IMG/VR virus record: IMGVR_UViG_3300018004_000004
Span: 62,001 to 126,000 of that record
Length of the DNA stretch: 64,000 bases
Strand: one strand, 5' to 3'
Shown here: positions 2,245-12,485 of the stretch, piece by piece
Position numbering within the stretch: position 1 is the first letter of the stretch
How the letters are laid out: each line of letters starts with the position of its first letter
The notes under the pieces: model-generated
Database searches by the model: none
Told to the model about the DNA's origin: nothing
What the model saw: the letters and a program-made list of their open reading frames with translations, nothing else
Translations under genes and position numbers: made by a program

Positions 2245-2586
2245 ATGTTAGAGACCCCAAAAGAAGTGCTCGGTGAGGGATATCCTCTGCCAACAGAGCA
2301 GGCGCGTAAGGAAACAGCGCCCATCTGGGAACGAGCATTTGAGATACATGCGACGGCACATGTAGGTGATAGTCGCTTCCACGAAGGGAGCATGCTCCCA
2401 GTGAGAGGAGATGAGTATCACAACGGTACTCCCTACTGTGACTGTTACATGCGAGCCTGGCTGGAGTTTCATGATCCTGTAAAGATAGCAGAACCCCAGG
2501 CTATAGTGCGTGAGAAAGAACGACTACGCGAGCTAGAAGAAGAGAGACAGAAGTTCGCGATAGAATACTTTGAGAGAGTTGTATGA
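2245..2586 (+). CDS. hypothetical protein
   Basis: 113-aa ORF, GAGG RBS, ATGA overlap with the next gene. Confidence 0.7.
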   Translation: MLETPKEVLGEGYPLPTEQARKETAPIWERAFEIHATAHVGDSRFHEGSMLPVRGDEYHNGTPYCDCYMRAWLEFHDPVKIAEPQAIVREKERLRELEEERQKFAIEYFERVV

Positions 2587-3482
2587 TCATCGAGCAGGGT
2601 GAATGCAATCTTAAGGATTGGATCAAAGAGGTCGGCATGTCCGGCCGTATGCAGTCTGTCCTTATTGCTTCTTTCCGCGGCGCTGATTCAGACGACTCAC
2701 CGGAAGTAAAGAGAGTCGTACGTTGGATCCGTAAGCAGTGCATCAAGCTGAACAATCCAAGATCTCATTTCATGAGAGACACGGAGTTCATTGATATTAA
2801 AGCTCTTATGGATCAAGATGCCTGGCAATGGGATCGTTTGAAGACACACTTCTACGATCACCTGAAGCAGGCATTGGCAGTCATAGCATTCTTTCATCCT
2901 GATGAGTGGGTGCAGGCAAAAGCACTTAAGGCCTACCACGATCTGACAGAGCACGAGAGCATTGTGCCCGAGGACCGTGTAGACTTGGTCTCGCGATTGG
3001 CAGATACTAAACCGATCGCGCGCGGTGAATGGGTAGTGCAGGACTGGGTCCTGCAGTTGAGTGGTAAGATGCAATCAGCTTTGTTCTGCGCTATGCGCGG
3101 ATCCGATATCTCTACGGAAGATGAAGTCCGAAGATTAACACGCTGGCTGCGTTGGGTAGTCATGAGAGATGTAATGCCAGAGTCGCATTACATGAAAGAC
3201 AGAGAGTTTATGAGCTTAAAGGTCAGATTCGAAATGTATCCATCGGAGTGGGGTAACCTGCCGATTCACTTCCGGCACCACACCCGAGAAGCGCTCGAGA
3301 TCGTGGGATACATGCATCCGGATAAAGACATCCGTGAACGCGCTCTGGCCGCGTATGAAGATATTTGTAAGAAGTCTAAGGGCAAGCCAGAAACAAAGTC
3401 CATCCTGGTAAATCGTATGAAAGATGAGCCGGGCAGGACTGCTGATCCAAATCAGCAACGAACCAACCTTCCGGTAGCTTAA
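2583..3482 (+). CDS. phage protein made of two tandem copies of a ~135-aa helical domain
   Basis: Both halves share DW..SG(R/K)MQS...RG.D...EV.R..RW.R...SH(F/Y)M.D.EF...HF..H...AL......HPD...R(L/M).D. Confidence 0.85.
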   Translation: MIIEQGECNLKDWIKEVGMSGRMQSVLIASFRGADSDDSPEVKRVVRWIRKQCIKLNNPRSHFMRDTEFIDIKALMDQDAWQWDRLKTHFYDHLKQALAVIAFFHPDEWVQAKALKAYHDLTEHESIVPEDRVDLVSRLADTKPIARGEWVVQDWVLQLSGKMQSALFCAMRGSDISTEDEVRRLTRWLRWVVMRDVMPESHYMKDREFMSLKVRFEMYPSEWGNLPIHFRHHTREALEIVGYMHPDKDIRERALAAYEDICKKSKGKPETKSILVNRMKDEPGRTADPNQQRTNLPVA

Positions 3483-3485
3483 CAC

Positions 3486-3561
3486 TGGTAGGTGGTGCAA
3501 ATGGTAGTCACGCCGGGCCTTGAACCCGGAGATCCTGGTTCGAATCCAGGCCTACCAACCA
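3486..3561 (+). tRNA. tRNA-Gln(TTG) with C33
   Basis: CCGGG-CCTTGAA-CCCGG; CCTGG-TTCGAAT-CCAGG; CCA. Confidence 0.92.
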
Positions 3562-3562
3562 T

Positions 3563-3637
3563 GGGTTCGTAGCTTAAAGGTAGAGCAACCGCCTTTTAAG
3601 CGGTGGAATGCTGGTTCAAATCCAGCCGGACCCACCA
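3563..3637 (+). tRNA. tRNA-Lys(TTT)
   Basis: ACCGC-CTTTTAA-GCGGT; CCA. Confidence 0.95.
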
Positions 3638-3638
3638 C

Positions 3639-3718
3639 GCTCCATTAGCTCAGCGGAAACCAAGAGCACTCGGCTACGGACCGAGGGGTCGGGAGTTCGA
3701 ATCTCTCATGGAGCACCA
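3639..3718 (+). tRNA. tRNA-Arg(ACG)
   Basis: CTCGG-CTACGGA-CCGAG; CCA. Confidence 0.95.
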
Positions 3719-3726
3719 AGTTTCGC

Positions 3727-3802
3727 GGGCTTGTAGCTCAGACGGAAGAGCAGCGGAGTTCTAACCCGCAGGCAGAGAGTTCGAATCTCTCCAAGCTCGC
3801 CA
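3727..3802 (+). tRNA. tRNA-Arg(TCT)
   Basis: GCGGA-GTTCTAA-CCCGC (G32, A.C at 31:39); CCA. Confidence 0.9.
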
Positions 3803-3812
3803 AGATTTACGT

Positions 3813-3887
3813 TGCCTACTCGTTTAACTGGTAGGACGCCAGCCTCTGGAGCTGGATATGAAGGTTCGAGTCCTTCGAAGGCAACCA
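3813..3887 (+). tRNA. tRNA-Gln(CTG)
   Basis: CCAGC-CTCTGGA-GCTGG; CCA. Confidence 0.93.
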
Positions 3888-3898
3888 CATATTTACTA

Positions 3899-3973
3899 GC
3901 CATGGTAGCTCCAATGTAGAGCTGCGCACCTGTAATGCGCGGGTTGGGGGTTCAAGTCCCTCCCATGGCTCCA
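3899..3973 (+). tRNA. tRNA-Thr(TGT) with C33
   Basis: GCGCA-CCTGTAA-TGCGC; GCCATGG/CCATGGC acceptor, U73, CCA; D loop lacks GG. Confidence 0.92.
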
Positions 3974-3983
3974 CGAGGTCACA

Positions 3984-4196
3984 ATGAACCAAGGAAGACC
4001 AGCACCGAAGCAATGCCCGTCAGTGGGTCAAGGTGTCACCTTGGTTGCAGGCTACACCCAGATGATGCTGGGCGCCAGGGTGAACAAGACGTGGAACCCA
4101 ACTACAAGACAGTGGGAGTTCATGAGCCGGCCGGCCCTCACAGAAGGAACCAACGGCGGCAAGAGATTCGCATTTGGGCCATCTAAGCTGATCTAA
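3984..4196 (+). CDS. hypothetical protein
   Basis: GAGGT RBS, ATG, 70 aa, fills an inter-tRNA gap. Confidence 0.65.
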   Translation: MNQGRPAPKQCPSVGQGVTLVAGYTQMMLGARVNKTWNPTTRQWEFMSRPALTEGTNGGKRFAFGPSKLI

Positions 4197-4199
4197 GTA

Positions 4200-4208
4200 T
4201 GGTATAAT
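4200..4208 (+). promoter_or_regulatory. extended -10 promoter element TGGTATAAT
   Basis: Exact TGnTATAAT in an intergenic position; the same 9-mer recurs at 8367. Confidence 0.6.
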
Positions 4209-4214
4209 GGGTTT

Positions 4215-4379
4215 GTGTTCAACCCAATCTATCCGACCTGCTCTAAGTGGTGGCGCGCTGTTTTCCGGCTGCGCACCATAGAAAGAGATGGAAGCTTTCA
4301 GATACGCTGTAGATTGGTGAAATCAGATAAGTGTTGTCGGTTCTATTGGTTAGTTATACGTAGGCAACTACTATACTAA
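4215..4379 (+). CDS. possible leaderless small protein (54 aa)
   Basis: GTG 7 nt after TATAAT; MFNPIYPTCSKWWRAVFRLRT...LLY*. Confidence 0.35.
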   Translation: MFNPIYPTCSKWWRAVFRLRTIERDGSFQIRCRLVKSDKCCRFYWLVIRRQLLY

Positions 4380-4384
4380 TCAGG
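4368..4384 (+). promoter_or_regulatory. putative phage promoter motif CTACTATACTAATCAGG
   Basis: 17-mer identical to the reverse complement of 63212-63228; lies just upstream of tRNA-Gly. Confidence 0.6.
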
Positions 4385-4391
4385 GGTACGA

Positions 4392-4465
4392 GCGAGGTTG
4401 GTATAGTGGTAGCACGTGACCTTGCCAAGGTCGAGGCACCGGTTCGAATCCGGTACTTCGCTCCA
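4392..4465 (+). tRNA. tRNA-Gly(GCC)
   Basis: TGACC-TTGCCAA-GGTCG; U73; CCA. Confidence 0.95.
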
Positions 4466-4472
4466 GGATCTT

Positions 4473-4595
4473 ATGCTAGCTTATGCAATAACTTGCACTG
4501 TTCTAATGGCTGCTGTTTACTTCGCGCCATTCTGCAAGAAAGGGTTTCGACCCGACCAATCACCAAAGTACACGGTGGGTCCTCTTAAGGGATAA
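4473..4595 (+). CDS. small membrane peptide (40 aa)
   Basis: MLAYAITCTVLMAAVYFAPFCKKGFRPDQSPKYTVGPLKG*; exactly fills the gap between the two tRNA-Gly genes. Confidence 0.55.
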   Translation: MLAYAITCTVLMAAVYFAPFCKKGFRPDQSPKYTVGPLKG

Positions 4596-4604
4596 TCGGG
4601 ACCA

Positions 4605-4680
4605 GCGGCTGTGATGTTAACGGCCAGCATGTCTGCCTTCCAAGCAGAATGTATCGGTTCGAATCCGATTAGCCGCTCCA
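4605..4680 (+). tRNA. tRNA-Gly(TCC)
   Basis: TCTGC-CTTCCAA-GCAGA; U73; CCA. Confidence 0.95.
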
Positions 4681-4687
4681 AGCTCTC

Positions 4688-4772
4688 GAAGCACGGTAAG
4701 GGTCATGGCCCTACACGGACGCATACGGATGATGTACCATGAGCCGTCCGGCGCAGCCGCATTACGTGCTTC
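4688..4772 (+). ncRNA. candidate small multi-branched RNA (non-tRNA cloverleaf)
   Basis: GAAGCACG/CGTGCTTC closing stem; inner arms AGGGT/GCCCT, CGGACG/CGTCCG, GCG/CGC. Confidence 0.55.
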
Positions 4773-4776
4773 CCGG

Positions 4777-4853
4777 GCCTCCGTAGCTCAGCCTAGCAGA
4801 GCACCGGGCATCTAACCCGGGGGTCATCCGCGAAACACGGATCGGGGGCTCCA
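4777..4853 (+). ncRNA. non-canonical tRNA-like RNA (nominal TCT anticodon, A33, no D-loop GG, no TTC)
   Basis: All four stems pair (GCCTCCG/CGGGGGC, GCTC/GAGC, CCGGG/CCCGG, ATCCG/CGGAT) and CCA is encoded; loops are AGCCTAGCA, CATCTAA and CGAAACA. Confidence 0.8.
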
Positions 4854-4858
4854 CGATC

Positions 4859-5062
4859 TTGCCTCTGGCTCCTCGTAAGAGGGGTAGTTCAAAGCTCACA
4901 GGGGCGCCAAGTGTAGTAGATGTAATCCGAGTCGCCGATCTTGACGACCTTCAAAGTGAGGTACACCGATGTTCAAACAACATCGGCACCGCCATCTTCA
5001 TCATCGCCACTACGGAAGAGGGCTATATCTTCTACTGGAGTGGGAAGGTGACGGAGTGGTAG
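4859..5062 (+). CDS. hypothetical protein
   Basis: 67-aa ORF, TTG start, fills the gap. Confidence 0.45.
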   Translation: MPLAPRKRGSSKLTGAPSVVDVIRVADLDDLQSEVHRCSNNIGTAIFIIATTEEGYIFYWSGKVTEW

Positions 5063-5085
5063 TGTCTTCCTTAGGAGGAACGTTA

Positions 5086-5466
5086 ATGATTCAAGTATCA
5101 GACAGTTTGCTTTCAAATCTCGCGTTGGCACTCGTTGACCAGCTCGGTTTCCCAGCCAATCTGGATGGCGTAACTGCAGTATGGTCGATCGACAACGCGA
5201 ATGTTGGTTCCATTGTGGGCAACAACTTCGCAGCTGTGTTCACACCTGGAACAGATTTGACCGACGTCGGAACCATCACAGCAGCCGTGAGCATCAATGG
5301 CACGTTTGCTTTCAATGTAACCGTCCAGGTCCAGGTTGTATCTGGTGCACCAGTGAGTGGTACAATCACACTGAGTGGCACTTCTCCTCTGCCGGCCGCT
5401 GCACCCGCAGCCCCAGCAGCTCCAGCAGCCCCTGCAGCCCCAGCGGCAACAGGCGCAACAGCCTAA
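5086..5466 (+). CDS. beta-rich (Ig-like) protein with (PAA)n tail
   Basis: TAGGAGG RBS before ATG 5086; alternating beta-strand pattern with WSIDN; C-terminal PAAAPAAPAAPAAPAAPAA. Confidence 0.8.
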   Translation: MIQVSDSLLSNLALALVDQLGFPANLDGVTAVWSIDNANVGSIVGNNFAAVFTPGTDLTDVGTITAAVSINGTFAFNVTVQVQVVSGAPVSGTITLSGTSPLPAAAPAAPAAPAAPAAPAATGATA

Positions 5467-5479
5467 AGTAGTCCTAAGT

Positions 5480-5506
5480 CCTGAGGGGTGAGTAAGGCCC
5501 CTCAGG
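5480..5506 (+). other. stable hairpin after the gene (terminator or processing signal)
   Basis: CCTGAGGGG/CCCCTCAGG 9-bp stem, no U tract. Confidence 0.5.
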
Positions 5507-5527
5507 CAGAGATTAGAAGTATAAGAT

Positions 5528-5660
5528 TGGTAGCGCGAAAAGCGACAGGTAGCCCCTCTGTATACCGAGGGCAGGTGCTGAATCGTCCCAGACGTGGGGT
5601 GATTTGGAAGTTGGTCCACCGGAAGGCCAGCGCGGTTGTCGTGTAAGCCGTGCGCTATTG
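5528..5660 (+). ncRNA. candidate ~130-nt multi-branched RNA
   Basis: TAGCGC/GCGCTA and GCGACAG/TTGTCGT nested closing stems enclose three hairpins (5552-5572, 5581-5604, 5610-5631). Confidence 0.6.
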
Positions 5661-5678
5661 ATATTCCAAGAGGTTGCT

Positions 5679-5810
5679 ATGTGCACAATGAAGTGTCCTG
5701 TGTGCGGTAAGCAGGTTAGCAAACCTCAGCCTAAAGACGAGTTCGTCTGCCCATGTGGTTGGCGATCGGAAGCAAAAAAGAACAACGGAGAACATCATGA
5801 AGAACAGTAA
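5679..5810 (+). CDS. small zinc-ribbon protein
   Basis: GAGGT RBS; MKCPVCGK...FVCPCGW. Confidence 0.7.
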   Translation: MCTMKCPVCGKQVSKPQPKDEFVCPCGWRSEAKKNNGEHHEEQ

Positions 5811-5952
5811 CGGGTCTAAGACACCTCCAGCACAACTTAGCAAGACCCCGTATATCGGCGACCCGATCTTCGCGTCACCGACCACACACAAGGCAAAGGC
5901 CATCAAGCCTACTCAGCCGAAGGTGGCAAACTCGGGCGTCAAAAAGGGCTAA
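5797..5952 (+). CDS. small Lys/Pro-rich basic protein
   Basis: GGAG RBS; MKNSNGSKTPPAQLSKTPYIG...GVKKG. Confidence 0.7.
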   Translation: MKNSNGSKTPPAQLSKTPYIGDPIFASPTTHKAKAIKPTQPKVANSGVKKG

Positions 5953-5965
5953 GCCGGCAACGGTA

Positions 5966-6088
5966 ATGGCCCTCAGAAAGAAAGCGAAGAAGGCCTCATG
6001 GTTTAACCATGGGGCCACTCGACTAGCCGCGGCTACAGTACAAATGTACAAGCCGCAGAAGCCATTACCGCAACCCAAAGCAAAGTAA
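5966..6088 (+). CDS. small basic peptide (40 aa)
   Basis: MALRKKAKKASWFNHGATRLAAATVQMYKPQKPLPQPKAK*. Confidence 0.55.
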   Translation: MALRKKAKKASWFNHGATRLAAATVQMYKPQKPLPQPKAK

Positions 6089-6121
6089 TACTCCCACCTT
6101 TGGCTTGCCGTCCTGGCAGGC

Positions 6122-6127
6122 TATAAT
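6122..6127 (+). promoter_or_regulatory. -10 element TATAAT upstream of tRNA-Asn
   Basis: Consensus hexamer, intergenic; -35 weak. Confidence 0.45.
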
Positions 6128-6145
6128 ACAACATAGAGATTCTAC

Positions 6146-6221
6146 TGGAGTGTGGCTCAACCGGTACAGCATCTGGCCGTTAACCAGACACTTGGGGGTT
6201 CGAGTCCCTCTGCTCCAGCCA
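6146..6221 (+). tRNA. tRNA-Asn(GTT) with C33
   Basis: TCTGG-CCGTTAA-CCAGA; G73; CCA. Confidence 0.92.
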
Positions 6222-6226
6222 AGCTT

Positions 6227-6625
6227 ATGAAAGAGACGCCCAAAGTAGAGAAGCGCATATACGTTGTCCTCCCTTCATTCGTCATATCACCGACGATGTT
6301 CCTAAGAGAGGTCATTCCGATGTCCTGCGGCCGCTGTATAGCACAGGCATGTCATGTGGTATCGAAGCTGAAGCTGAGACTTAAACTGGATCCCGATGAA
6401 GAACACACAACCATCGTCCTCAAAGTCGTTGACAGCGACGAGCTGGAAAAAGTCCGTGATAAGATCTCACGCTCGCGTCTTCCGTGGGAAGAGTTTCGCG
6501 ATACCAACCCCGGGTACTATAAGACTGAAAAGTCCATCCTAACCGCGGTTGCTGTTTGTTGTTCGAGAAAGAAAGGTAAGTCACTGTTCCATGGCTACGA
6601 TGCCTGGCAGTGTGATGTGGAGTAA
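6227..6625 (+). CDS. peptidyl-tRNA hydrolase, Pth2 family
   Basis: MSCGRCIAQACH, IVLKVVDSDELE, EFRD and LTAVA match Pth2 motifs (MS.GK..AQ..HA; K.VLK.....EL; I.D; T...GP). The true start is ATG 6227, after tRNA-Asn. Confidence 0.82.
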   Translation: MKETPKVEKRIYVVLPSFVISPTMFLREVIPMSCGRCIAQACHVVSKLKLRLKLDPDEEHTTIVLKVVDSDELEKVRDKISRSRLPWEEFRDTNPGYYKTEKSILTAVAVCCSRKKGKSLFHGYDAWQCDVE

Positions 6626-6634
6626 ACTCGTGAA

Positions 6635-6720
6635 GAACGATACAATGGGCGGATGCATTCGATTGCTAGGCCTGCTTAGTTAGCAGGCCCGCGGACTGCC
6701 GTCCCCGGACCTTGTAGTTC
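6635..6720 (+). ncRNA. candidate rod-like structured RNA
   Basis: Nested GAAC/GTTC, TACAA/TTGTA, GGGCGG/CCGTCC and terminal GGCCTGCT/AGCAGGCC helices. Confidence 0.4.
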
Positions 6721-6723
6721 AAG

Positions 6724-6802
6724 GCGCTGGTGGACAAAATGGCAAAGCCGCCTCGTTCAGACCGAGGAGATTTTGTGGGTTCGAATCCCACCCAGCGCAC
6801 CA
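6724..6802 (+). tRNA. tRNA-Leu(CAG) lacking the long variable arm
   Basis: CCTCG-TTCAGAC-CGAGG; Leu-type D arm; variable region only AGATTTT; A73; CCA. Confidence 0.88.
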
Positions 6803-6815
6803 AGTTTATCGATGT

Positions 6816-6904
6816 GCTGGAGTGGCGTAACTGGCAGCCGCGCAGGGCTCAAGCCCCTGTGGCCCTAGAAAGCCGTGAGAGTTCGAATCTCTCCTTCAGC
6901 ACCA
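6816..6904 (+). tRNA. tRNA-Leu(CAA)
   Basis: CAGGG-CTCAAGC-CCCTG; long variable arm; CCA. Confidence 0.95.
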
Positions 6905-6905
6905 A

Positions 6906-6990
6906 GTACCTGTGCTGAAACTGGTAGCCAGCCGCGGTTGAGAGCCGCGTGCCGCAAGGCGTGGAGGTTCGAATCCTCTCAGGTACACCA
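6906..6990 (+). tRNA. tRNA-Leu(GAG)
   Basis: CGCGG-TTGAGAG-CCGCG; GCC-GCAA-GGC variable arm; CCA. Confidence 0.95.
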
Positions 6991-6995
6991 AGATT

Positions 6996-7313
6996 ATGAT
7001 ACCAACGCTTCTCAAGATCGCAGTGGGTATTCTGATTCCGGCCGCAACAGCAGACGGAGTCAGCACAGCTCACTTTCTGAGGAAAGGTTACACTGAAGCA
7101 GATCGAATCATGATCTGGATCTACGGCACCGATGATCCTTCAGTGAAGAGGATGTGGGTTCGTAGCAGCATTGCCGTAGCACTCGAGGTCCTTGTAGCAG
7201 GTATTGCAGCGCATTACTGGACACCTGCAGGATACGGATTTGGAGTTGGGTATCTGTGCCAGGCAGCTTATCACGTCTACTGTACAGTGAACAACTATAG
7301 GAACGTGCCATGA
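6996..7313 (+). CDS. small multi-pass membrane protein (DUF5658-like)
   Basis: Three hydrophobic segments; D..ST...L.KG..E motif shared with 7496-7849. Confidence 0.7.
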   Translation: MIPTLLKIAVGILIPAATADGVSTAHFLRKGYTEADRIMIWIYGTDDPSVKRMWVRSSIAVALEVLVAGIAAHYWTPAGYGFGVGYLCQAAYHVYCTVNNYRNVP

Positions 7314-7381
7314 AAGGCGGACAGAGCAGCGGAGTCGGTTATCGTAGCGCTTAATGAGCGCACGGAGAGGTGCGCTTCCAT

Positions 7382-7471
7382 GGAGGCGCAGCAGAGACGG
7401 GGATCTGCACTTGGCCGTAACCCAAGGTCCCAACGGGACTAGAGAAGGTTCAAATCCTTCCGTCTCCACCA
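7382..7471 (+). tRNA. tRNA-Tyr(GTA) with C33 and C8
   Basis: GGAGGCG/CGTCTCC acceptor; CTTGG-CCGTAAC-CCAAG; GTCCC/GGGAC variable arm; A73; CCA. Confidence 0.9.
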
Positions 7472-7495
7472 AGTTTAGAAGTACAAGGAGCAAAT

Positions 7496-7849
7496 ATGTT
7501 TGATCCATCGACAGATCCAAGAACGTGGCCCAATCAACCGGGCTTCTGGGAATCACTCGGTATCTTCGTTCTGTATGCTTACATGCTCGTTGCTATCCTG
7601 GGCGACACGTATTACACAGGGGTCGGACTGGCAAAGGGATTGAAGGAAATGAATCCTATCAATCGCTGGCTCTTCCCCAAGTTGGGTCAAGCATTGACTT
7701 GTTTTGTTGAAGCCGCGGCAATCACAGTAGTAGGTGGAGTCTTCATGGCCTATAGTATGCCGCTGGCTTATGGTTATTGGGGACTCATCGCAGCCCTCGA
7801 AACCTGGATGGTTTATCGTAATCGCAAGATCCTAGGATTGAGTTTGTAA
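7496..7849 (+). CDS. small multi-pass membrane protein (DUF5658-like)
   Basis: AAGGAG RBS; GDTYYTGVGLAKGLKEMNPINRWLF motif; three TM segments. Confidence 0.8.
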   Translation: MFDPSTDPRTWPNQPGFWESLGIFVLYAYMLVAILGDTYYTGVGLAKGLKEMNPINRWLFPKLGQALTCFVEAAAITVVGGVFMAYSMPLAYGYWGLIAALETWMVYRNRKILGLSL

Positions 7850-7895
7850 TGACGCGCGCACTAGAGCCACGACCCGAACGACCGTAAAAGGTCAC

Positions 7896-7969
7896 CGGGG
7901 TGTGTTCTAGTGGTAGGATCCATGCGTCGGAAGCATGGGGCGGAGGTTCGATTCCTCCCACCCCGACCA
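7896..7969 (+). tRNA. tRNA-Pro(CGG) with G32 and A37
   Basis: CATGC-GTCGGAA-GCATG; C1-G72, A73; CCA. Confidence 0.92.
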
Positions 7970-7978
7970 GATTTCCGT

Positions 7979-8053
7979 GGGGCAGTGGCGCAACGGGAGC
8001 GCAGATGCTTTGCAAGCATAAGGTTGTGGGTTCGATTCCCATCTGCTCCACCA
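7979..8053 (+). tRNA. tRNA-Ala(TGC)
   Basis: G3.U70; loop TTTGCAA; CCA. Confidence 0.95.
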
Positions 8054-8063
8054 AGGATTGACA

Positions 8064-8276
8064 ATGATCATCGAATCATACGTAACTGAAGTAGTAGATA
8101 CCGACACGAAGCAGAAGAGAGCTTTTGTCGGTGTAGTTGGTGGCGAAGTACTGTTGGATGTTCCCTTCAAGGATACCGATAACGAGAATCTGATCAAGAC
8201 TCTCGTATGCGCTATCAGGGTTCTCGAACAGAAGCTGGTAGATGCTGGCCAGCCGCCATTTGGTGGTATAGTTTAA
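8064..8276 (+). CDS. hypothetical protein
   Basis: AAGGA RBS; 70 aa; fills the tRNA gap. Confidence 0.7.
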   Translation: MIIESYVTEVVDTDTKQKRAFVGVVGGEVLLDVPFKDTDNENLIKTLVCAIRVLEQKLVDAGQPPFGGIV

Positions 8277-8279
8277 CGC

Positions 8280-8357
8280 AGGCCGGTCGTTTAGCCCGGT
8301 CCAGGACCTCGGTCTCCAAAACCGATGACGGTGGTTCAAATCCATCCTGGCCTGCCA
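8280..8357 (+). tRNA. tRNA-Trp(CCA)
   Basis: TCGGT-CTCCAAA-ACCGA; G73; CCA. Confidence 0.95.
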
Positions 8358-8366
8358 AAGGATTTG

Positions 8367-8375
8367 TGGTATAAT
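8367..8375 (+). promoter_or_regulatory. extended -10 promoter element TGGTATAAT
   Basis: Exact TGnTATAAT upstream of the Ser/Ser/Phe tRNA group. Confidence 0.6.
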
Positions 8376-8438
8376 AAAAACATGAACGATACAGCCAACT
8401 CGAGTAGTAGAAGCTCATCACGATCTACCCGTGTATAC

Positions 8439-8528
8439 GGAGGGTTGGCTGAGTTTGGAAAGGCGCCAGGTTGCTAACCTGAGGCCTGGTGAAAGCCAGC
8501 GTAGGTTCAAATCCTACACCCTCCGCCA
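8439..8528 (+). tRNA. tRNA-Ser(GCT)
   Basis: Loop TTGCTAA; long variable arm; G73; CCA. Confidence 0.95.
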
Positions 8529-8534
8529 AGTTTA

Positions 8535-8623
8535 GGAGGGCAGCGCTGAATGGTCGGCAACGGTCCCGAAAACCGAGACTCGTCGAAAGGCGAGACAGAG
8601 TTCGATTCTCTGGCCCTCCTCCA
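8535..8623 (+). tRNA. tRNA-Ser(CGA) with C33, A8 and U73
   Basis: GGAGGGC/GCCCTCC; CGGT-CCCGAAA-ACCG; long variable arm CTCGTC-GAAA-GGCGAG; CCA. Confidence 0.88.
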
Positions 8624-8625
8624 AA

Positions 8626-8699
8626 CCCGCGGTCGTTCAATGGTAGGACCCCTGACTGAAGATCAGGAGATGATGGTTCGAATCCATCCCAAGGGACCA
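8626..8699 (+). tRNA. tRNA-Phe(GAA), two acceptor-stem mismatches, G37
   Basis: CCTGA-CTGAAGA-TCAGG; CCCGCGG/CCAAGGG acceptor; CCA. Confidence 0.88.
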
Positions 8700-8706
8700 C
8701 AAGTTT

Positions 8707-8877
8707 ATGAGTAGTACAGAAGATCTGATTTACAGGCTGCGCAAGCGCGCTGAGATACGAAGGCAGATAACTACACGCAAGAGCGTACAAGAAGGAAAGC
8801 CTGATCGTATCGCCGATCTTCTGGAAGAAGCAGCCAATGAGCTGCAAAGATTATTGGATTTGACCTGTAGTAGATGA
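8707..8877 (+). CDS. small conserved-type phage protein (56 aa), absent from the ORF track
   Basis: MSSTEDLIYRLRKRAEIRRQITTRKSVQEGKPDRIADLLEEAANELQRLLDLTCSR*. Confidence 0.8.
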   Translation: MSSTEDLIYRLRKRAEIRRQITTRKSVQEGKPDRIADLLEEAANELQRLLDLTCSR

Positions 8878-9002
8878 GTAGTCCTTGTATTCTGGCTCTG
8901 CCATTCGGAAATAGCAGAGCGCGTCAATCGGCACGGTGTTGTACAATCCGTGGTGGCGCTCACGGATTACAACGAGACTAATCATCTAGGTCAGTTGTTC
9001 TT

Positions 9003-9096
9003 AGGTCTGCAGGAGCTGTAGTCACCACTGCATAAGCTGGTGCCCCCACATTACGGGGGAGAGCTGGCGTCGCCTTTGAGTGCTACAGTTAGACCT
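9003..9096 (+). ncRNA. candidate rod-like structured RNA with internal bubble
   Basis: AGGTCT/AGACCT; AGCTGTAG(T)CAC/GTGCTACAGTT bulged helix; terminal CCCCC/GGGGG hairpin. Confidence 0.5.
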
Positions 9097-9107
9097 TCGT
9101 ATTTCGC

Positions 9108-9186
9108 GGTGATATGGGACAGTCTGGCCTACTCCGCTCCCCTGTCACGGGAAACCTCGCCGGTTCAAATCCGGCTATCACCGCCA
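9108..9186 (+). tRNA. tRNA-Asp(GTC)
   Basis: Loop CTGTCAC; G73; CCA. Confidence 0.93.
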
Positions 9187-9187
9187 A

Positions 9188-9262
9188 GGCCCTATCGTCT
9201 ATGGGATAGGACTCCGGCTTCTCAAGCCGGCAACCCGGGTTCGATTCCCGGTGGGGTCACCA
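9188..9262 (+). tRNA. tRNA-Glu(CTC)
   Basis: CCGGC-TTCTCAA-GCCGG; CCA. Confidence 0.95.
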
Positions 9263-9296
9263 GTTTAACTTAGTCAAGGTCGGAGGACCAAGTACT

Positions 9297-9743
9297 ATGA
9301 GTAATGAAAAGAAAGACGCTACGCTTGGTATGTCACACGGTACGGCTACAAATAGATTACGTAAGCAGATAATGTTTAGATTACTGCAACGTTTGAATGA
9401 GAACTTTTGCTTTCGTTGTGGATGTGAAATACAATCAGTAGATGATCTAAGCATCGAACATAAGCAGCCTTGGGAAGGTATCAGTGCTGACTTATTCTGG
9501 GATGAAGAGAACATTGCCTTTTCTCACTTGCGATGCAATAGACCAGATAGACCAAGCGGTAGAAATGCGAATGCCAAGATTCCACCAATAGAAGGTGTAT
9601 GCTGGTGCGTTCCTGGCGATCATTTTGCTCCAGTCGATAACTTCTACAAGAATGAAAGTAGACCGACAGGATTACAGAACTGGTGCAAGGATCATAGACC
9701 TCCTCGATTAGGAGGCTACCACAAGTTTGCGATGCTCTGTTAG
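9297..9743 (+). CDS. HNH endonuclease with C-terminal Zn-binding domain
   Basis: CFRCG...LSIEHKQPW...NIAFSHLRCN; C-terminal CWC..DHF...NFYKN.SRPTGLQNWCKDH. Confidence 0.88.
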   Translation: MSNEKKDATLGMSHGTATNRLRKQIMFRLLQRLNENFCFRCGCEIQSVDDLSIEHKQPWEGISADLFWDEENIAFSHLRCNRPDRPSGRNANAKIPPIEGVCWCVPGDHFAPVDNFYKNESRPTGLQNWCKDHRPPRLGGYHKFAMLC

Positions 9744-9930
9744 TCAGCCGTGTATACGGAACATCATCGCCGATACGGTGACGTTAATCAACAGGAGTGT
9801 AACGAGCCTCGAAAACTCGTTTCGTCTGAAAAACCTCCGACCCTTGAGTTTAGATGTGTCGAGCGAGGACACATCGCATGGCTATCTGGGCGCCTCGAGC
9901 CGAAGGGTAGCCAGAGTTTAGCGGGACTAA
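9740..9930 (+). ncRNA. candidate ~190-nt multi-hairpin RNA directly after the HNH gene
   Basis: TTAGTC/GACTAA closing stem; hairpins CCGTG/TACGG, CATCG/CGGTG, AACGAG/CTCGTT, GATGTGTC/GACACATC, TGGCTATC/GGTAGCCA. Confidence 0.6.
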
Positions 9931-9940
9931 GTAGCTAGTG

Positions 9941-9990
9941 CTTTCCCCATCGGCTGCTACCTTGCCGTCGGCGGCATGGCCAGGGGAAAG
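9941..9990 (+). other. intergenic hairpin
   Basis: CTTTCCCC/GGGGAAAG closing stem with inner TGCCG/CGGCA. Confidence 0.45.
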
Positions 9991-10035
9991 GATCCTGTTC
10001 GCGACTGGATCTCACCCGCGGGTTTAGGAGACACA

Positions 10036-10194
10036 ATGTTTACACTTCTCAAGGTTGTAGTGGAAGGGATTCTTACCCTTCTTGTTTTCTTTGGCGGCAT
10101 GAAGTTCCAGCAACACTACCCTAACTTCATTGCGCGCGTTGATAGTATCCTAGCATGGATCAAGAACATCCTGCCAGGTACAACGAAGTCTTAA
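10036..10194 (+). CDS. small membrane protein (52 aa)
   Basis: TAGGAG RBS; MFTLLKVVVEGILTLLVFFGGMKF. Confidence 0.75.
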   Translation: MFTLLKVVVEGILTLLVFFGGMKFQQHYPNFIARVDSILAWIKNILPGTTKS

Positions 10195-10196
10195 GT

Positions 10197-10271
10197 GCCC
10201 AAGTCGTACATGGGTTAGGATCCCAATCTTTCAAGTTGGGGAACAGAGTTCGAGTCTCTGCTCGGGTACCA
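10197..10271 (+). tRNA. tRNA-Glu(TTC)
   Basis: CCAAT-CTTTCAA-GTTGG; CAGAG-TTCGAGT-CTCTG; CCA. Confidence 0.9.
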
Positions 10272-10272
10272 A

Positions 10273-10422
10273 ATGAACTTCAAGCGAAAGCGACCAAAGA
10301 ACGCACGCAGTGGCTGCCTAATGTGCAAGCCACATAAGATGAATGGAATCAAACATACTTACCATGTCAAAGGTATCAGAGGCAAGGTGAACATCAAGGA
10401 TTTAGAACGGAGAGTGGCCTAG
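10273..10422 (+). CDS. small basic CxxC protein (49 aa), absent from the ORF track
   Basis: MNFKRKRPKNARSGCLMCKPHKMNG...; the 3' end overlaps tRNA-Pro. Confidence 0.7.
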   Translation: MNFKRKRPKNARSGCLMCKPHKMNGIKHTYHVKGIRGKVNIKDLERRVA

Positions 10423-10486
10423 TCCGGTTTAAGGCGCGTGCCTTGGGCGCACGAGATCGAGAGTTCAAATCTCTCCTCTCCGACCA
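10408..10486 (+). tRNA. tRNA-Pro(TGG)
   Basis: CGTGC-CTTGGGC-GCACG; CCA. Confidence 0.95.
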
Positions 10487-11133: not shown

Positions 11134-11137
11134 TCTT

Positions 11138-11483
11138 GGGGACGTCCCGGTTTCGACAGATAGCGGAACGACCTGAATGCATGCCGGTGCCTGACGACCG
11201 TAACTGTTGGAAAACTTTAACTGCAGAGTTTGAAGAACTGCCGTTGGCTGCTTAAAGCAGCCACGTCCTACCTGACGATGCCTATTGATTGGGCTAGGGC
11301 GTAAACTAGTGGGCTAAGCTTCCCGGGTCAGCTCCCTGCGAGCCGGGCGGATGAAAACCAAGAAGGGATACTGGGACCTCACTTGTCCGGTCTGTAGGCC
11401 CCTGAGAAACCGAACGGAATAAGCATGTAGTATTCATAAGTAATGCTTTCTGGACACGGGTTCAACTCCCGTCGTCTCCACCA
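11138..11483 (+). ncRNA. ssrA: tmRNA; tag ORF 11223-11255 = (A)AEFEELPLAA*
   Basis: 5' GGGGACGTCCCGGTTTCGAC; 3' GACACGGGTTCAACTCCCGTCGTCTCCACCA with G3.U70; TAACT before the GCA resume codon; stop codon inside a hairpin. Confidence 0.96.
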
Positions 11484-11502
11484 AGTGTAAAGGAAGGAAG
11501 AA

Positions 11503-12258
11503 GTGGCTCTCATAGCATTCGTTGGTGATACACACTACAGGTTCTATGAGATGTATGCTGCGTTGGCTGCCTGGCAACTACGTACAGGCAACCTGTTAGA
11601 CGCGATCATCCACGTAGGTGATTTTGGAGTTGATAAGTTCAATCCCCAGTGGGCTCACCTCTGGGAACGCGACAAGCAAGTTCCAATAGAGACTTATGTA
11701 AACATGGGCAACCATGAGAATCATGAGTCTATCAAAAAGTGGCAAGCCGAGCCTAATAGAATAGCTCGCTTGCACCTCCTGCCAGATGGCGGTGTCACTG
11801 ACATCGCTGGTGTAAAGGTTGCATCCGTCTGGGGAAACTACAGTCCCCGGAGCTGGATGAATCCTGATATAGTTAAGTGCGCAAGGAATCACTCGGTTCC
11901 AGGTAGTTTGAAAGCACTGCATATCTATCGTCCTCACGTTCTTGAGCTTCTCAGGTACGATGGGCCGGTGGATGTCTTAGTTACACATGATTGTTCGACA
12001 GCTGTTGTGCCATGGAAGTTCGCAGGCAAACCAGTACCAGAAGGTCTGCGCGCAGTCCTGGGACTAGATCACGATGAGACAGTACCTCCAGGATGTCCTG
12101 GATTTACGCAGCTGCTCAACAAGTTCAAACCTACATACCATTTCTACGGACACATGCATCTGAAAGACGTTCAGGAAAGGGAAGGAACCAAGGTTATCTG
12201 CCTAAATGCATTCGACTTCAATCAAAACGAAGCAGTTGAGATTGTGGCTTTCAAATAA
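11503..12258 (+). CDS. calcineurin-like metallophosphoesterase (Dbr1-like motif spacing)
   Basis: GDTH, GDFG, GNHE, DVLVTHD, FYGHMH motifs. Confidence 0.92.
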   Translation: MALIAFVGDTHYRFYEMYAALAAWQLRTGNLLDAIIHVGDFGVDKFNPQWAHLWERDKQVPIETYVNMGNHENHESIKKWQAEPNRIARLHLLPDGGVTDIAGVKVASVWGNYSPRSWMNPDIVKCARNHSVPGSLKALHIYRPHVLELLRYDGPVDVLVTHDCSTAVVPWKFAGKPVPEGLRAVLGLDHDETVPPGCPGFTQLLNKFKPTYHFYGHMHLKDVQEREGTKVICLNAFDFNQNEAVEIVAFK

Positions 12259-12447: not shown

Positions 12448-12485
12448 AAAGGGCCCAAGAGGAAGTTCTCTTGGGCCCCTTTTTT
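12448..12485. terminator. intrinsic terminator at the convergence of the two blocks (likely bidirectional)
   Basis: AAA-GGGCCCAAGAG-GAAGTT-CTCTTGGGCCC-CTTTTTT. Confidence 0.9.

What the first reader, a model, noticed from the sequence alone, without database searches (positions are those of the whole stretch)
11503..12258. Dbr1-like phosphoesterase immediately after tmRNA
Seen: beyond the generic metallophosphoesterase motifs it has ALHIYRPHV..L....PVDVLVTHD and PGCPGFTQLLNKFKPTYHFYGHMH. From memory these resemble the lariat-debranching enzyme Dbr1 segments YHVR..DV..L....DIFLSHDWP and GSP....LL..LKP.YWFSAHLH. Established: Dbr1 hydrolyses 2'-5' phosphodiesters; retron msDNA and some cyclic-nucleotide defence signals contain 2'-5' links; other family members heal 2',3'-cyclic phosphate RNA ends. 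Inference: a tRNA-end-healing or anti-defence phosphodiesterase.
Basis: partly seen in the sequence, partly recalled or inferred. Interest (0 to 1): 0.6.

Follow-up and report, generated by a model that had tools for sequence, protein, structure and literature searches.

The report
Phage Dbr1-like RNA phosphodiesterase after tmRNA
A 215-kb peat-soil phage encodes, 19 bases after its own tmRNA gene, a small metal-dependent phosphodiesterase whose closest characterised relative is the eukaryotic intron-lariat debranching enzyme Dbr1; gene neighbourhoods in related phages tie it to tRNA genes and RNA-repair enzymes, so it is probably a new kind of RNA-mending or counter-defence enzyme.

Summary
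ORF 11503-12258 (+) encodes a 251-aa metallophosphoesterase (MPE) with all metal and catalytic motifs intact, starting 19 nt after a phage tmRNA.

The Dbr1 resemblance is real:
- A 27-member family profile matches only Dbr1 (E 2e-16) and CWF19L1 among all PDB sequences.
- hhalign against true Dbr1 MPE domains gives 99.8% probability (E 1e-29).
- Dbr1's lariat-recognition loop is retained, conserved and basic.

It is not a Dbr1 orthologue:
- It has Asp where Dbr1 has its invariant Cys.
- It has no C-terminal domain.
- It lacks the segment carrying the branch-point-stacking Tyr.
- It forms a separate viral clade.

Context points to RNA. In three independent lineages the gene directly follows a tmRNA or tRNA gene. 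In one complete 94-kb phage it sits inside a Pnkp–Rnl1–MPE–OB-type RNA ligase cassette, and in a marine phage it sits near a CCA-adding enzyme, RlaP, Rnl1 and a kinase. The window's own genome encodes Pnkp and both ligases 114-125 kb away.

Best reading (about 0.45): an accessory RNA phosphodiesterase for tRNA/tmRNA repair or counter-defence. True 2'-5' debranching, for example of retron msDNA, is not excluded. I rate it a new variant of a known kind.

The parts
1610..10486 (+). Array of about 25 tRNA genes with small ORFs between them (including an HNH endonuclease at 9297-9743). It lies upstream on the same strand as the tmRNA and the MPE.
   Evidence: ARAGORN; Rfam tRNA matches; Pfam HNH.
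11138..11483 (+). Phage-encoded tmRNA with a 10-residue tag ending in LAA. Its 3' CCA is encoded.
   Evidence: ARAGORN; Rfam RF00023 at 150 bits, E 5e-59; sequence read.
11484..11502 (+). 19-nt spacer between the tmRNA CCA end and the start codon. It is purine-rich and Shine-Dalgarno-like, and contains no promoter-like site.
   Evidence: The same 19-nt spacing occurs in L002 (MPE 66% identical) and L004 (55% identical).
11503..12258 (+). Gene for the 251-aa single-domain, Dbr1-like binuclear metallophosphoesterase (P0001).
11527..11535 (+). MPE motif I (D9-x-H11). Asp stands where Dbr1 has its invariant Cys. H11 corresponds to Dbr1 H16.
   Evidence: Invariant in 27 homologues; motif table; alignments; PMC4176325.
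11617..11622 (+). MPE motif II (G39-D40), the bridging metal ligand.
   Evidence: Invariant.
11707..11718 (+). MPE motif III (G69-N70-H71-E72). H71 corresponds to the Dbr1 general-acid His.
   Evidence: Invariant; PMC4176325.
11830..11931 (+). Equivalent of the lariat-recognition loop (W110-R143). It is conserved, carries a net charge of about +4, and includes the invariant W110-G111-N112, R128 and H140-I141.
   Evidence: It aligns to the Dbr1 LRL with only a 2-residue gap and likewise in HMMER. pLDDT is 82-92. The LRL definition is from PMC4176325.
11986..11991 (+). MPE motif IV (H162-D163).
   Evidence: Invariant. The III-IV spacing of 91 residues matches Dbr1's 89-90.
12091..12102 (+). Invariant G197-C198-P199-G200. 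It aligns to the conserved Dbr1 G-S-P motif, and the preceding D191 aligns to Dbr1 D205.
12148..12159 (+). MPE motifs V and VI (G216-H217-x-H219).
   Evidence: Invariant. The IV-VI spacing is 56 residues against 53 in Dbr1 and about 35-45 in most other short hits.
12451..12478 (.). Bidirectional intrinsic-terminator-like hairpin (12 to 14 pairs, T-runs on both sides). It separates the + strand tRNA-tmRNA-MPE unit from the convergent - strand structural genes.

Best explanation
The gene encodes a catalytically intact, single-domain binuclear metallophosphodiesterase. It belongs to a virus-borne branch of the Dbr1-like MPE assemblage. I put this family assignment at about 0.9.

Expression (inferred): it is the last gene of the tRNA-tmRNA transcription unit. 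Its short leader with a ribosome-binding site is probably exposed when the tmRNA 3' end is processed.

Function (inferred): the basic, conserved lariat-recognition-loop equivalent beside the metal site probably holds a single-stranded RNA arm. The enzyme would then hydrolyse a phosphate ester at a damaged or aberrantly joined ribose in tRNA-like RNAs. The most plausible target is an ester on the 2'-O side, namely a 2',3'-cyclic phosphate or a 2'-5' junction, as in Dbr1. The products would be ends that the phage's own Pnkp and its two RNA ligases can finish. On this reading it is an accessory member of the phage toolkit that keeps translation RNAs working against host tRNA-targeting defences.

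Shown: the fold, the motifs, the loop, the gene neighbourhoods, and presence in RNA libraries. Inferred: the substrate, the bond cleaved, and the biological role.
For: Family:
- Pfam Metallophos and phrog_1649 match.
- Only Dbr1 and CWF19L1 are found in the PDB by sequence.
- hhalign against true Dbr1 gives 99.8%.
- The AF2 model has pLDDT 92.
- Foldseek ranks 1-9 are all Dbr1 at about 1e-15, then CWF19L1, then a gap to 1e-8.
- All catalytic residues are invariant in 27 homologues.

Nucleic-acid substrate: the LRL equivalent is retained, conserved and carries +4.4 net charge on a protein of -6.6. In Dbr1 this loop binds the 3' RNA arm (PMC4176325).

RNA context:
- The gene follows a tmRNA at exactly 19 nt in three genomes with 55-100% identical MPEs, a tRNA-Pro at 15 nt in L007, and a tRNA at 57 nt in the marine L111.
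- In the complete 94-kb phage behind L015/L112 it lies between Pnkp, an Rnl1-type ligase and an OB-type ligase.
- L111 has a CCA-adding enzyme, RlaP, Rnl1 and a kinase 3-7 kb upstream.
- The window's genome encodes Pnkp, an OB-type Rnl and Rnl1.

Expression: one 1,162-nt contig from a wetland metatranscriptome runs from the tmRNA 5' region across the junction to just past the stop codon. Its depth is 37.7, against 2.6 upstream and none downstream.

Precedent: Iyer et al. 2021 propose calcineurin-like phosphatases in jumbo-phage RNA repair (PMC7824862).
Against: - No activity has been measured.
- Pnkp already supplies the kinase and the 2',3'/3' phosphatase, so simple end healing would be redundant, and the extra step I propose is speculative.
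- In the window's genome the repair genes are 114-125 kb away.
- Only 2 of 80 phage loci anchored on the OB-type RNA ligase have an MPE-profile hit within 10 kb.
- Three lineages place the gene near DNA-metabolism genes instead: PDDEXK_1, RecA, NT5C and DNA polymerase.
- tRNA adjacency among related jumbo phages may partly reflect shared ancestry.
- The RNA evidence rests on assembled contigs, which cannot prove a single transcript, and DNA can be carried over into RNA libraries.
- The known RNA-healing MPE (CthPnkp, lambda-phosphatase clade) is not among the matches.
Confidence: 0.45

Rival explanations
1. It is a genuine debranching or 2'-5' phosphodiesterase used as an anti-defence enzyme. 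It would cut the 2'-5' RNA-DNA branch of retron msDNA, or 2'-5'-linked immune signals such as 3'2'- or 2'3'-linked cyclic oligonucleotides, and so disarm the host system.
For: Dbr1 is the closest characterised relative, and the LRL is retained. Dbr1 debranches retron RT-DNA in vitro (PMC8989520). Anti-defence genes, including the anti-retron Rad, lie in the tRNA-rich region of T5-like phages (10.1101/2023.03.15.532788). The protein partly matches the PADLOC candidate PDC-S10.
Against: Three features that are essential or invariant in Dbr1 are missing: Cys14, the CTD, and the Tyr64 segment. The family is a separate clade from Dbr1. No retron-related, CBASS-related or sponge genes are linked to it in any of the 8 contexts, whereas RNA-repair genes are. 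Loss of msDNA can trigger rather than block some retrons (my own knowledge of the retron toxin-antitoxin model). Rad itself is an unrelated Toprim-like protein.
Confidence: 0.2
2. It is a DNA-directed nuclease or end-processing phosphodiesterase of the replication and recombination module, comparable to Mre11/SbcD or the Pseudomonas putida MPE ssDNA endonuclease.
For: In L005/L006 and L028 the gene lies near PDDEXK_1 nucleases, AAA_24, a helicase-primase and DNA polymerase A. In L113 it lies between RecA and a deoxynucleotidase. MPE nucleases in ligase-containing repair operons are known (PMC7826289).
Confidence: 0.12
3. It is a cyclic-nucleotide or small-nucleotide phosphodiesterase that destroys host second messengers (cAMP, cCMP/cUMP, cyclic di- or tri-nucleotides, alarmone-type compounds), in the manner of Icc/CpdA, Rv0805 or MPPED2.
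For: MPPED2, Rv0805 and GpdQ are detectable structural neighbours. Iyer et al. predict calcineurin-like PDEs (T5 A1 type) as counter-nucleotide enzymes. An HD_4 alarmone-hydrolase-like gene lies 1 kb upstream in L005.
Against: These clades score about 9 Z units lower than Dbr1 and are absent from the profile search of the PDB. A conserved, basic 34-residue loop that in Dbr1 grips an RNA arm is unnecessary for a mononucleotide. tblastn finds no T5-like phage among the phage records, so the protein is not an A1 orthologue.
Confidence: 0.1
4. It is a protein phosphatase (lambda-phosphatase-like) or another small-molecule phosphatase, and its position next to the tmRNA is an accident of genome organisation.
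For: It is a generic Metallophos Pfam member, and phage Ser/Thr phosphatases of this superfamily exist (my own knowledge).
Against: No PPP-family or lambda-phosphatase chain appears in the sequence search (E up to 10) or in the top 50 structural matches. Motif II lacks the PPP-type D-R-G extension. The adjacency to tRNA-like genes recurs in three independent lineages.
Confidence: 0.05

Closest known systems
Dbr1, the RNA lariat debranching enzyme (Entamoeba histolytica structures 4PEF, 4PEH, 5K77, 5K78; Pfam Metallophos + PF05011)
   Different: It has Asp9 instead of the invariant alpha-pocket Cys. It has no C-terminal domain, which is essential in Dbr1. A 15-residue deletion removes the segment that carries the branch-point-stacking Tyr64. 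It is viral and 251 aa long. It forms a separate clade, while true Dbr1 nests among other short Asp-type and archaeal MPEs. Its activity is unknown.
CWF19L1 / Drn1 N-terminal MPE-like domain (8RO2, 8RO1 chain L1)
   Different: CWF19L1 is a multi-domain eukaryotic spliceosome-disassembly and Dbr1-assisting factor. The sequence match covers only the N-terminal third. The phage protein keeps every catalytic residue.
The phosphatase module of bacterial Pnkp (Clostridium thermocellum Pnkp/Hen1 RNA repair; PMC3675462)
   Same: It is a binuclear MPE that heals RNA 2',3'-cyclic phosphate ends and is encoded next to a kinase and an RNA ligase. This is the functional analogy suggested by the L015/L112 cassette.
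   Different: It belongs to the lambda-phosphatase-like clade, and it is not detected by the profile or among the top structural matches. It is fused to the kinase and ligase rather than standing alone.
Calcineurin-like phosphoesterases predicted in jumbo-phage RNA repair (Iyer et al. 2021, PMC7824862)
   Same: They are phage-encoded, of the same superfamily, and are proposed to clear phosphate ends for ATP-dependent RNA ligases.
   Different: The survey names no Dbr1 relationship, no loop, no tmRNA linkage and no family definition. I could not establish whether the same family was meant.
aq_1956 (2YVT) and TT1561 (1UF3), uncharacterised bacterial MPEs
   Different: They share only 11-12% identity, have about 20 fewer aligned residues, are not found by the sequence profile, and have no known function.

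Membership tests
Binuclear metallophosphoesterase (calcineurin-like) superfamily | Motifs D-x-H, G-D, G-N-H-[ED], H, G-H and G-H-x-H on a beta-alpha-beta-alpha-beta sandwich fold | tested here: met
   Pfam PF00149 at E 1.9e-10. All motif residues are invariant in 27 homologues. The confident AF2 model matches hundreds of MPE chains.
Dbr1 (lariat debranching enzyme) | An MPE domain closer to Dbr1 than to other MPE clades | tested here: met
Dbr1 (lariat debranching enzyme) | The lariat-recognition loop insertion (Eh residues 130-158) next to the active site | tested here: met
   Residues 110-143 align to the LRL with a 2-residue gap. The invariant loop His is kept (H140) and an Arg (R143) lies within one position of the invariant Dbr1 Arg. 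The segment is conserved and basic. The definition is from PMC4176325. I did not inspect a coordinate-level superposition.
Dbr1 (lariat debranching enzyme) | An invariant Cys replacing Asp in motif I (alpha metal pocket) | tested here: not met
   D9 is invariant in all 27 family members, whereas all 32 CTD-bearing or long hits with G-C-x-H are true Dbr1.
Dbr1 (lariat debranching enzyme) | The C-terminal domain (Pfam PF05011), required for activity in vivo | tested here: not met
   The protein ends 32 residues after motif VI and has no PF05011 hit. P0076 and P0078 serve as positive controls.
Dbr1 (lariat debranching enzyme) | A branch-point adenine pocket formed by H16 and Y64 | tested here: inconclusive
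   The H16 equivalent (H11) is invariant. The 15-residue segment preceding Y64 is deleted and the aligned position is not a conserved aromatic. Another aromatic such as W50 or W54 could substitute, but I could not check this without coordinates.
Dbr1 (lariat debranching enzyme) | Placement inside the Dbr1 clade in a phylogeny | tested here: not met
   In the IQ-TREE of 139 MPE domains the phage family is its own clade (SH-aLRT 100). Dbr1 (99) nests in a different 52-row clade (99). The join between the two has only 81 support, and the tree is unrooted.
Dbr1 (lariat debranching enzyme) | Hydrolysis of 2'-5' phosphodiester bonds at RNA branch points | not testable with these tools
   This needs a biochemical assay.
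RNA-repair end-healing enzymes (functional class) | Conserved gene linkage to a polynucleotide kinase and an RNA ligase | tested here: inconclusive
   The gene lies inside a Pnkp-Rnl1-MPE-Rnl cassette in one lineage and within 7 kb of Rnl1, RlaP, a kinase and a CCA-adding enzyme in a second. The genes co-occur in the window's genome, but 114-125 kb away. The linkage is absent in three other contexts, and it is seen in only 2 of 80 ligase-anchored loci.
Lambda-phosphatase / CthPnkp-type MPE phosphatases | Sequence or structural affinity to the PPP/lambda-phosphatase clade | tested here: not met
   No such chain appears at E up to 10 in the profile search or in the top 50 structural matches.
Class III cyclic-nucleotide phosphodiesterases (Icc/CpdA, Rv0805) and MPPED | Closest affinity to these clades | tested here: not met
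T5 Rad (retron anti-defence) | Homology to the 189-aa Toprim-like Rad protein | tested here: not met
   The paper describes Rad as a Toprim/primase-like protein, not an MPE. I ran no sequence comparison because no Rad sequence was held.

The most novel reading that the evidence does not exclude
This is the first debranching-type enzyme of the prokaryotic world. It would be a phage-encoded, CTD-less Dbr1 relative that specifically cleaves 2'-5' phosphodiester bonds. One possible use is reopening 2'-5'-joined (mis-ligated or host-sabotaged) tRNA or tmRNA, so that the phage ligases can reseal the ends correctly. Another is debranching retron msDNA or 2'-5'-linked immune signals. Either would reveal a 2'-5' bond-based layer in phage-host conflicts, and the family would also bear on the prokaryotic and viral roots of eukaryotic Dbr1.
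Probability: 0.25. Interest if true: 0.85.

Novelty: new variant of a known kind. Interest (0 to 1): 0.6.

Why it matters
Dbr1 is regarded as a eukaryotic enzyme, and no debranching-type 2'-5' phosphodiesterase is known from bacteria or their viruses, although bacteria make 2'-5' bonds in retron msDNA, group II lariats, some cyclic-oligonucleotide signals and LigT products.

This is a conserved phage family that keeps Dbr1's substrate-gripping loop and full catalytic site. It works without the C-terminal domain that Dbr1 needs, and it is wired to tmRNA and tRNA genes and to RNA-repair cassettes. That makes a concrete hypothesis testable: that phage RNA repair or counter-defence includes a step acting on 2'-linked phosphates.

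It could also provide a minimal 251-aa debranching-type enzyme for biotechnology, such as msDNA or lariat processing. Together with the short Asp-type and archaeal relatives seen here, it is a lead on where Dbr1 came from. If its activity turns out to be plain 3'-end healing, it remains a modest addition to the known variety of healing enzymes (HAD, HD, 2H, MPE).

Tried and rejected
- T5 Rad as a model: Rad is an unrelated Toprim-like protein, so it serves only as a precedent for anti-defence genes in tRNA regions.
- RtcB and reverse transcriptase, group II intron or retron genes in the phage genome: none found. The enzyme is therefore not there to recycle the phage's own lariats, and there is no RtcB pathway.
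- Close DNA relatives among 50,697 deposited phages: none. By protein, only a Desulfovibrio phage at 23% identity, and the record is unannotated.
- Scan of 185,579 prokaryote species genomes: no relative confirmed. I therefore have no prophage or host clue. This is a pattern-based search, so absence is weak evidence.
- IMG/VR: only 11 loci, and 3 of them belong to the core family.
- OB-type RNA-ligase-anchored scan: 2 of 80 loci have an MPE hit within 10 kb. I therefore dropped the claim of general linkage to RNA ligase.
- PADLOC PDC-S10: a partial match (E 3.6e-8) to an uncharacterised candidate that is also flagged in freshwater jumbophages. It gives no functional information.
- NCBIfam: nothing near the cut-offs.
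- Names for the intermediate hits: almost none, apart from Nanoarchaeota MAG 'metallophosphoesterase'.
- ESM Atlas: only generic MPE clusters.
- First tree attempt with the mixture model timed out, so I used LG+G4 instead.
- Metatranscriptome laying used assembled contigs only. It therefore cannot show transcript ends, strand or a single molecule.
- No coordinates were available in the Python box, so I could not do a residue-level superposition on RNA-bound Dbr1.
- I did not run complex prediction, because I claim no protein-protein contact.
Full report
**1. What is in the sequence**

The window is part of a 215,395-bp IMG/VR virus record that CheckV rates 100% complete; the window is C1:62001-126000. 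Near-identical DNA occurs in at least 18 peat, wetland and soil metagenome runs from 2014 to 2025.

Positions 1610-10486 carry about 25 tRNA genes on the + strand, followed by a tmRNA at 11138-11483 (ARAGORN; Rfam RF00023 at 150 bits). The tmRNA ends in an encoded CCA. After a 19-nt purine-rich spacer (window:11484-11502) with a Shine-Dalgarno-like run, the ORF 11503-12258 starts with GTG and encodes 251 residues.

No sigma-70-like promoter lies between 10400 and 12800. A strong bidirectional terminator hairpin lies at 12451-12478, just before the convergent minus-strand tail-fibre-like genes.

**2. Is it an active metallophosphoesterase?**

- Pfam gives Metallophos (E 1.9e-10), PHROGs gives phrog_1649 'metallo-phosphoesterase' (E 9e-18), and NCBIfam gives nothing near its cut-offs.
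- The word-based search found 28 metagenomic homologues at 41-85% identity and 236-273 aa. Several come from contigs of 211-219 kb.
- In the alignment of 27 of them, every canonical metal or catalytic residue is invariant: D9, H11, D40, N70, H71, H162, H217 and H219. So are W110-G111-N112, R128, H140-I141 and G197-C198-P199-G200.

The enzyme is therefore under purifying selection and should be catalytically competent.

**3. Is the Dbr1 resemblance real?**

Yes, by four independent measures.

(a) The single sequence searched against every PDB chain sequence hits only Entamoeba Dbr1 (E 7e-6, residues 4-239 against 11-254) and CWF19L1. With the family profile the result is Dbr1 at E 2e-16, CWF19L1 at 8e-4, and nothing else up to E = 10.

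(b) I built a profile from 23 true Dbr1 MPE domains. These are long proteins with G-C-x-H in motif I, and two that I tested carry Pfam PF05011. hhalign against this profile gives 99.8% probability and E 1.1e-29 over 248 columns.

(c) The AlphaFold2 model is confident (pLDDT 92.1, pTM 0.91). Foldseek ranks nine Dbr1 entries first (E about 1e-15, TM 0.72-0.74), then CWF19L1, then a drop to MPPED2 at 1e-8 and to LpxH, Rv0805 and Mre11 near 1e-6.

|---|---|
| Dbr1 (rmsd 2.4 Å, 229 of 251 residues) | 23.9 |
| CWF19L1 | 21 |
| aq_1956 / TT1561 | 18 |
| Purple acid phosphatase, MPPED2, Rv0805, GpdQ, Mre11 | 14-15 |

**4. Which Dbr1-specific features are present?**

Montemayor et al. (PMC4176325) define Dbr1 by five features:
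- the MPE core;
- an invariant Cys in the alpha metal pocket;
- a C-terminal domain that braces the loop;
- a branch-point adenine sandwiched between H16 and Y64.

Deleting the CTD or the LRL, or mutating Cys14, abolished complementation in their assays.

In the phage family the status of each feature is as follows.
- **LRL: present.** Residues 110-143 align to it with only a 2-residue gap. The invariant loop His falls on the invariant H140, and an Arg (R143, Arg or Lys in the family) lies within one position of Dbr1's invariant loop Arg. The segment is as conserved as the rest of the protein. It carries a mean net charge of +4.4 on a protein whose overall charge is -6.6.
- **Other conserved positions: present.** The Dbr1 G-S-P motif and D205 correspond to the invariant G-C-P and to D191.
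- **Motif spacing: Dbr1-like.** The spacings are 91 and 56 residues, against 89-90 and 53 in Dbr1. Most other short hits have 35-45 for the second interval.
- **Alpha-pocket Cys: absent.** It is Asp in all members.
- **CTD: absent.** The protein ends 32 residues after the last motif.
- **Tyr64 segment: absent.** A 15-residue Dbr1 segment that precedes Tyr64 is missing.

**5. Where does it sit in the family tree?**

The exhaustive profile search of 1.84 billion representatives found 19 clusters at E of 1e-30 or lower (the family itself), 284 at 1e-10 or lower, and 2,292 at 1e-3 or lower. Beyond the family, three kinds of protein are interleaved at E of 1e-29 to 1e-13: short Asp-type MPEs, true Dbr1, and 400-aa MPEs from Nanoarchaeota MAGs with an unrelated tail.

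I built a maximum-likelihood tree of 139 MPE domains. It is unrooted, uses LG+G4, and all of its rows were chosen for likeness to the query.
- The phage family is its own clade (support 100).
- Seven short Asp-type proteins are a weak sister group to it.
- True Dbr1 (support 99) nests in a different 52-row clade (support 99), together with other short Asp-type and archaeal proteins.
- The two groups join with support of only 81.

The protein is therefore a member of a broader Dbr1-like assemblage. It is not a Dbr1 orthologue. The ESM Atlas cluster that holds it has 59 members, 87% of them viral. A pattern scan of 185,579 prokaryote genomes confirmed no relative.

**6. Genomic context**

This is the main evidence on function. 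I obtained eight independent contexts.

| Lineage | Loci (MPE identity to P0001) | Context |
|---|---|---|
| A | window/L013, L002/L003 (66%), L004 (55%), L014 (53%) | tRNA array, then tmRNA, then MPE. The gap is exactly 19 nt in the first three and about 137 nt in L014. |
| B | L007 (47%) | tmRNA 1.8 kb upstream; tRNA-Pro ends 15 nt before the MPE. |
| C | L005/L006 (47%) | Early region with an HD_4 alarmone-hydrolase-like gene, PDDEXK_1, AAA_24 and DNA polymerase A; tRNA-Gln 1 kb upstream. |
| D | L015 = L112 (identical MPE, 41%; one record is a complete 94-kb phage) | Pnkp (kinase + HAD phosphatase), DUF7352, T4 Rnl1-type ligase, two small ORFs, MPE, OB-type RNA ligase, then tRNAs 3 kb downstream. 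All lie on one strand. |
| E | L028 | PDDEXK_1, helicase and primase; tRNA-Met 2.8 kb downstream. |
| F | L029 | Nothing recognisable. |
| G | L111 (most divergent member, marine) | CCA-adding enzyme, RlaP, Rnl1 and a polynucleotide kinase 3-7 kb upstream. tRNA-Cys and a tRNA with a tca anticodon follow, the latter ending 57 nt before the MPE. |
| H | L113 (a 3.5-kb contig) | RecA, then MPE, then a deoxynucleotidase. |

Three independent lineages (A, B, G) place the gene directly behind a tRNA-like gene. Six of eight have a tRNA or tmRNA gene within 3 kb. Two (D, G) place it among RNA-repair genes.

The window's own genome has the same repair trio, but at a distance: Pnkp at C1:187817-188797, the OB-type ligase at 194046-195332 and an Rnl1-type ligase at about 198.7-200.0 kb. 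That is 114-125 kb from the MPE. It has no RtcB and no reverse transcriptase.

The caveats matter:
- Anchoring on the OB-type ligase across IMG/VR, only 2 of 80 loci have an MPE-profile hit within 10 kb.
- Three contexts look DNA-oriented.
- Synteny within lineage A is partly inherited.

**7. Expression**

In RNA run X19, one 1,162-nt contig from a strain about 93% identical starts near the tmRNA 5' end, crosses the junction and ends about 20 nt past the MPE stop codon. Its depth is 37.7, against 2.6 for the region upstream and none downstream. That strain reads ATG at the start position. Run X20 has small low-depth contigs inside the ORF.

This is what a tmRNA-MPE co-transcript would give. 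However, assembled contigs cannot prove a single molecule, and DNA carried over into RNA libraries cannot be excluded.

**8. Interpretation**

Shown:
- The protein is an intact binuclear MPE of the Dbr1-like sub-fold with the RNA-arm-binding loop.
- It is viral.
- It is the last gene of a tRNA-tmRNA unit.
- It recurs next to tRNA-like genes, and in places inside RNA-repair cassettes.

Inferred:
- It acts on RNA rather than on a small molecule. The grounds are the basic conserved loop and the context.
- It contributes to keeping tRNA or tmRNA functional under host attack.

Pnkp already provides the kinase and the 2',3'/3' phosphatase, so the MPE probably handles a lesion that those enzymes cannot. 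Given its ancestry, an ester on the 2'-O side is the most economical guess. This could be a 2'-5' junction, a branch, or a particular cyclic or 2'-phosphate end. Dbr1-type cleavage leaves a 5'-phosphate and free 2'/3'-OH, which are the ends ATP-dependent RNA ligases need (my own knowledge of Dbr1 and Rnl chemistry). I put this RNA-repair or counter-defence reading at about 0.45.

The rivals are:

| Rival | Probability |
|---|---|
| Genuine debranching or 2'-5' anti-defence enzyme, for example against retron msDNA, which Dbr1 does cleave (PMC8989520) | 0.2 |
| DNA-end nuclease | 0.12 |
| Cyclic-nucleotide phosphodiesterase | 0.1 |
| Protein or other phosphatase | 0.05 |

**9. Novelty**

Iyer et al. 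2021 state that in a few jumbo phages calcineurin-like domains may provide the phosphatase step of RNA repair. Their text never mentions debranching or tmRNA (PMC7824862). Searches of the held literature found no description of a phage or bacterial Dbr1-type enzyme. The only 'Dbr1-like' mentions in phage papers are conserved-domain boilerplate.

I therefore rate it a new variant of a known kind: a CTD-less, Asp-type, viral Dbr1-like MPE linked to tmRNA and tRNA genes and to RNA repair. Interest is 0.6. The family-level result is solid and unexpected for a phage, but the mechanism is untested.

Noticed in passing
window 11138-11483; L002 9635-9981; L004 9637-9981; L007 4844-5195; L014 4521-4857: These phages encode their own tmRNA, with short tags of 8-10 residues ending in LAA or MAA. 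In one metatranscriptome strain the middle 133 nt of the tmRNA is replaced by 136 unrelated letters, so that part of the molecule is variable. I did not search for a phage SmpB.
   Followed up: partly
G000:C1:187817-188797, 194046-195332 and about 198719-199954 (outside the window): A T4-like RNA-repair trio (Pnkp with kinase plus HAD phosphatase, an OB-type PF09414 RNA ligase, and an Rnl1-type PF09511 ligase) lies within about 12 kb of the same genome. An ATP-dependent DNA ligase with a WGR domain lies near the contig end (C1:213944-215083).
   Followed up: partly
window 1610-10486: An array of about 25 tRNA genes covers most amino acids, and an HNH endonuclease ORF (9297-9743) lies inside it. 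The minus-strand tRNA-Arg call at 3502-3574 overlaps two plus-strand tRNAs and is probably spurious.
   Followed up: no
L002 5995-6069; L003 4491-4565; L111 7871-7943: Related phages carry a tRNA with a tca anticodon, which ARAGORN labels SeC. It may be an opal suppressor. L002/L003 also carry a PTH2-type peptidyl-tRNA hydrolase and an Endonuclease_7 gene inside the tRNA array.
   Followed up: no
window 14605-14988 (-); L002 15393-15776; L007 9368-9769: A small Vsr / MTES_1575-like endonuclease is conserved a few genes downstream of the MPE on the opposite strand in several relatives.
   Followed up: no
window 12745-14043 (-) and 15335-17260 (-): These are large Gly/Ser/Thr-rich ORFs with repeated segments. 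They are probably tail fibres and they converge on the MPE gene. Pfam gives no significant match.
   Followed up: no
proteins P0052, P0070, P0074, P0080, P0117, P0134, P0175 and P0137, P0119, P0136, P0094, P0110 (tree): True eukaryotic Dbr1 nests (support 99) among short Asp-type MPEs and roughly 400-aa Nanoarchaeota-MAG MPEs with an unrelated C-terminal extension. These may be the prokaryotic kin from which Dbr1 arose. The tree is unrooted and the rows were chosen for likeness to the phage family.
   Followed up: partly
L026 872-7449; L027: The weak sister lineage of the family (P0179) lies in a phage-like contig with a second MPE gene, two tRNA-Gln genes, a cRec domain (PF20274, predicted to process cyclic phosphates) and SSB. 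Another sister (P0180, L024) lies in a 412-kb cellular-looking contig between two DNA glycosylase genes.
   Followed up: no
L005 1451-7453: The 72-kb phage that carries a 47%-identical MPE has two COOH-NH2 ligase genes, a class-II glutamine amidotransferase and a sigma-70-like factor upstream of the MPE region.
   Followed up: no
window 10400-12700: This stretch is held almost word for word by 18 DNA runs from peat, wetland and soil metagenomes deposited between 2014 and 2025, so the phage or close strains are widespread in peat soils. Many of these samples may be the source of the assembly.
   Followed up: partly
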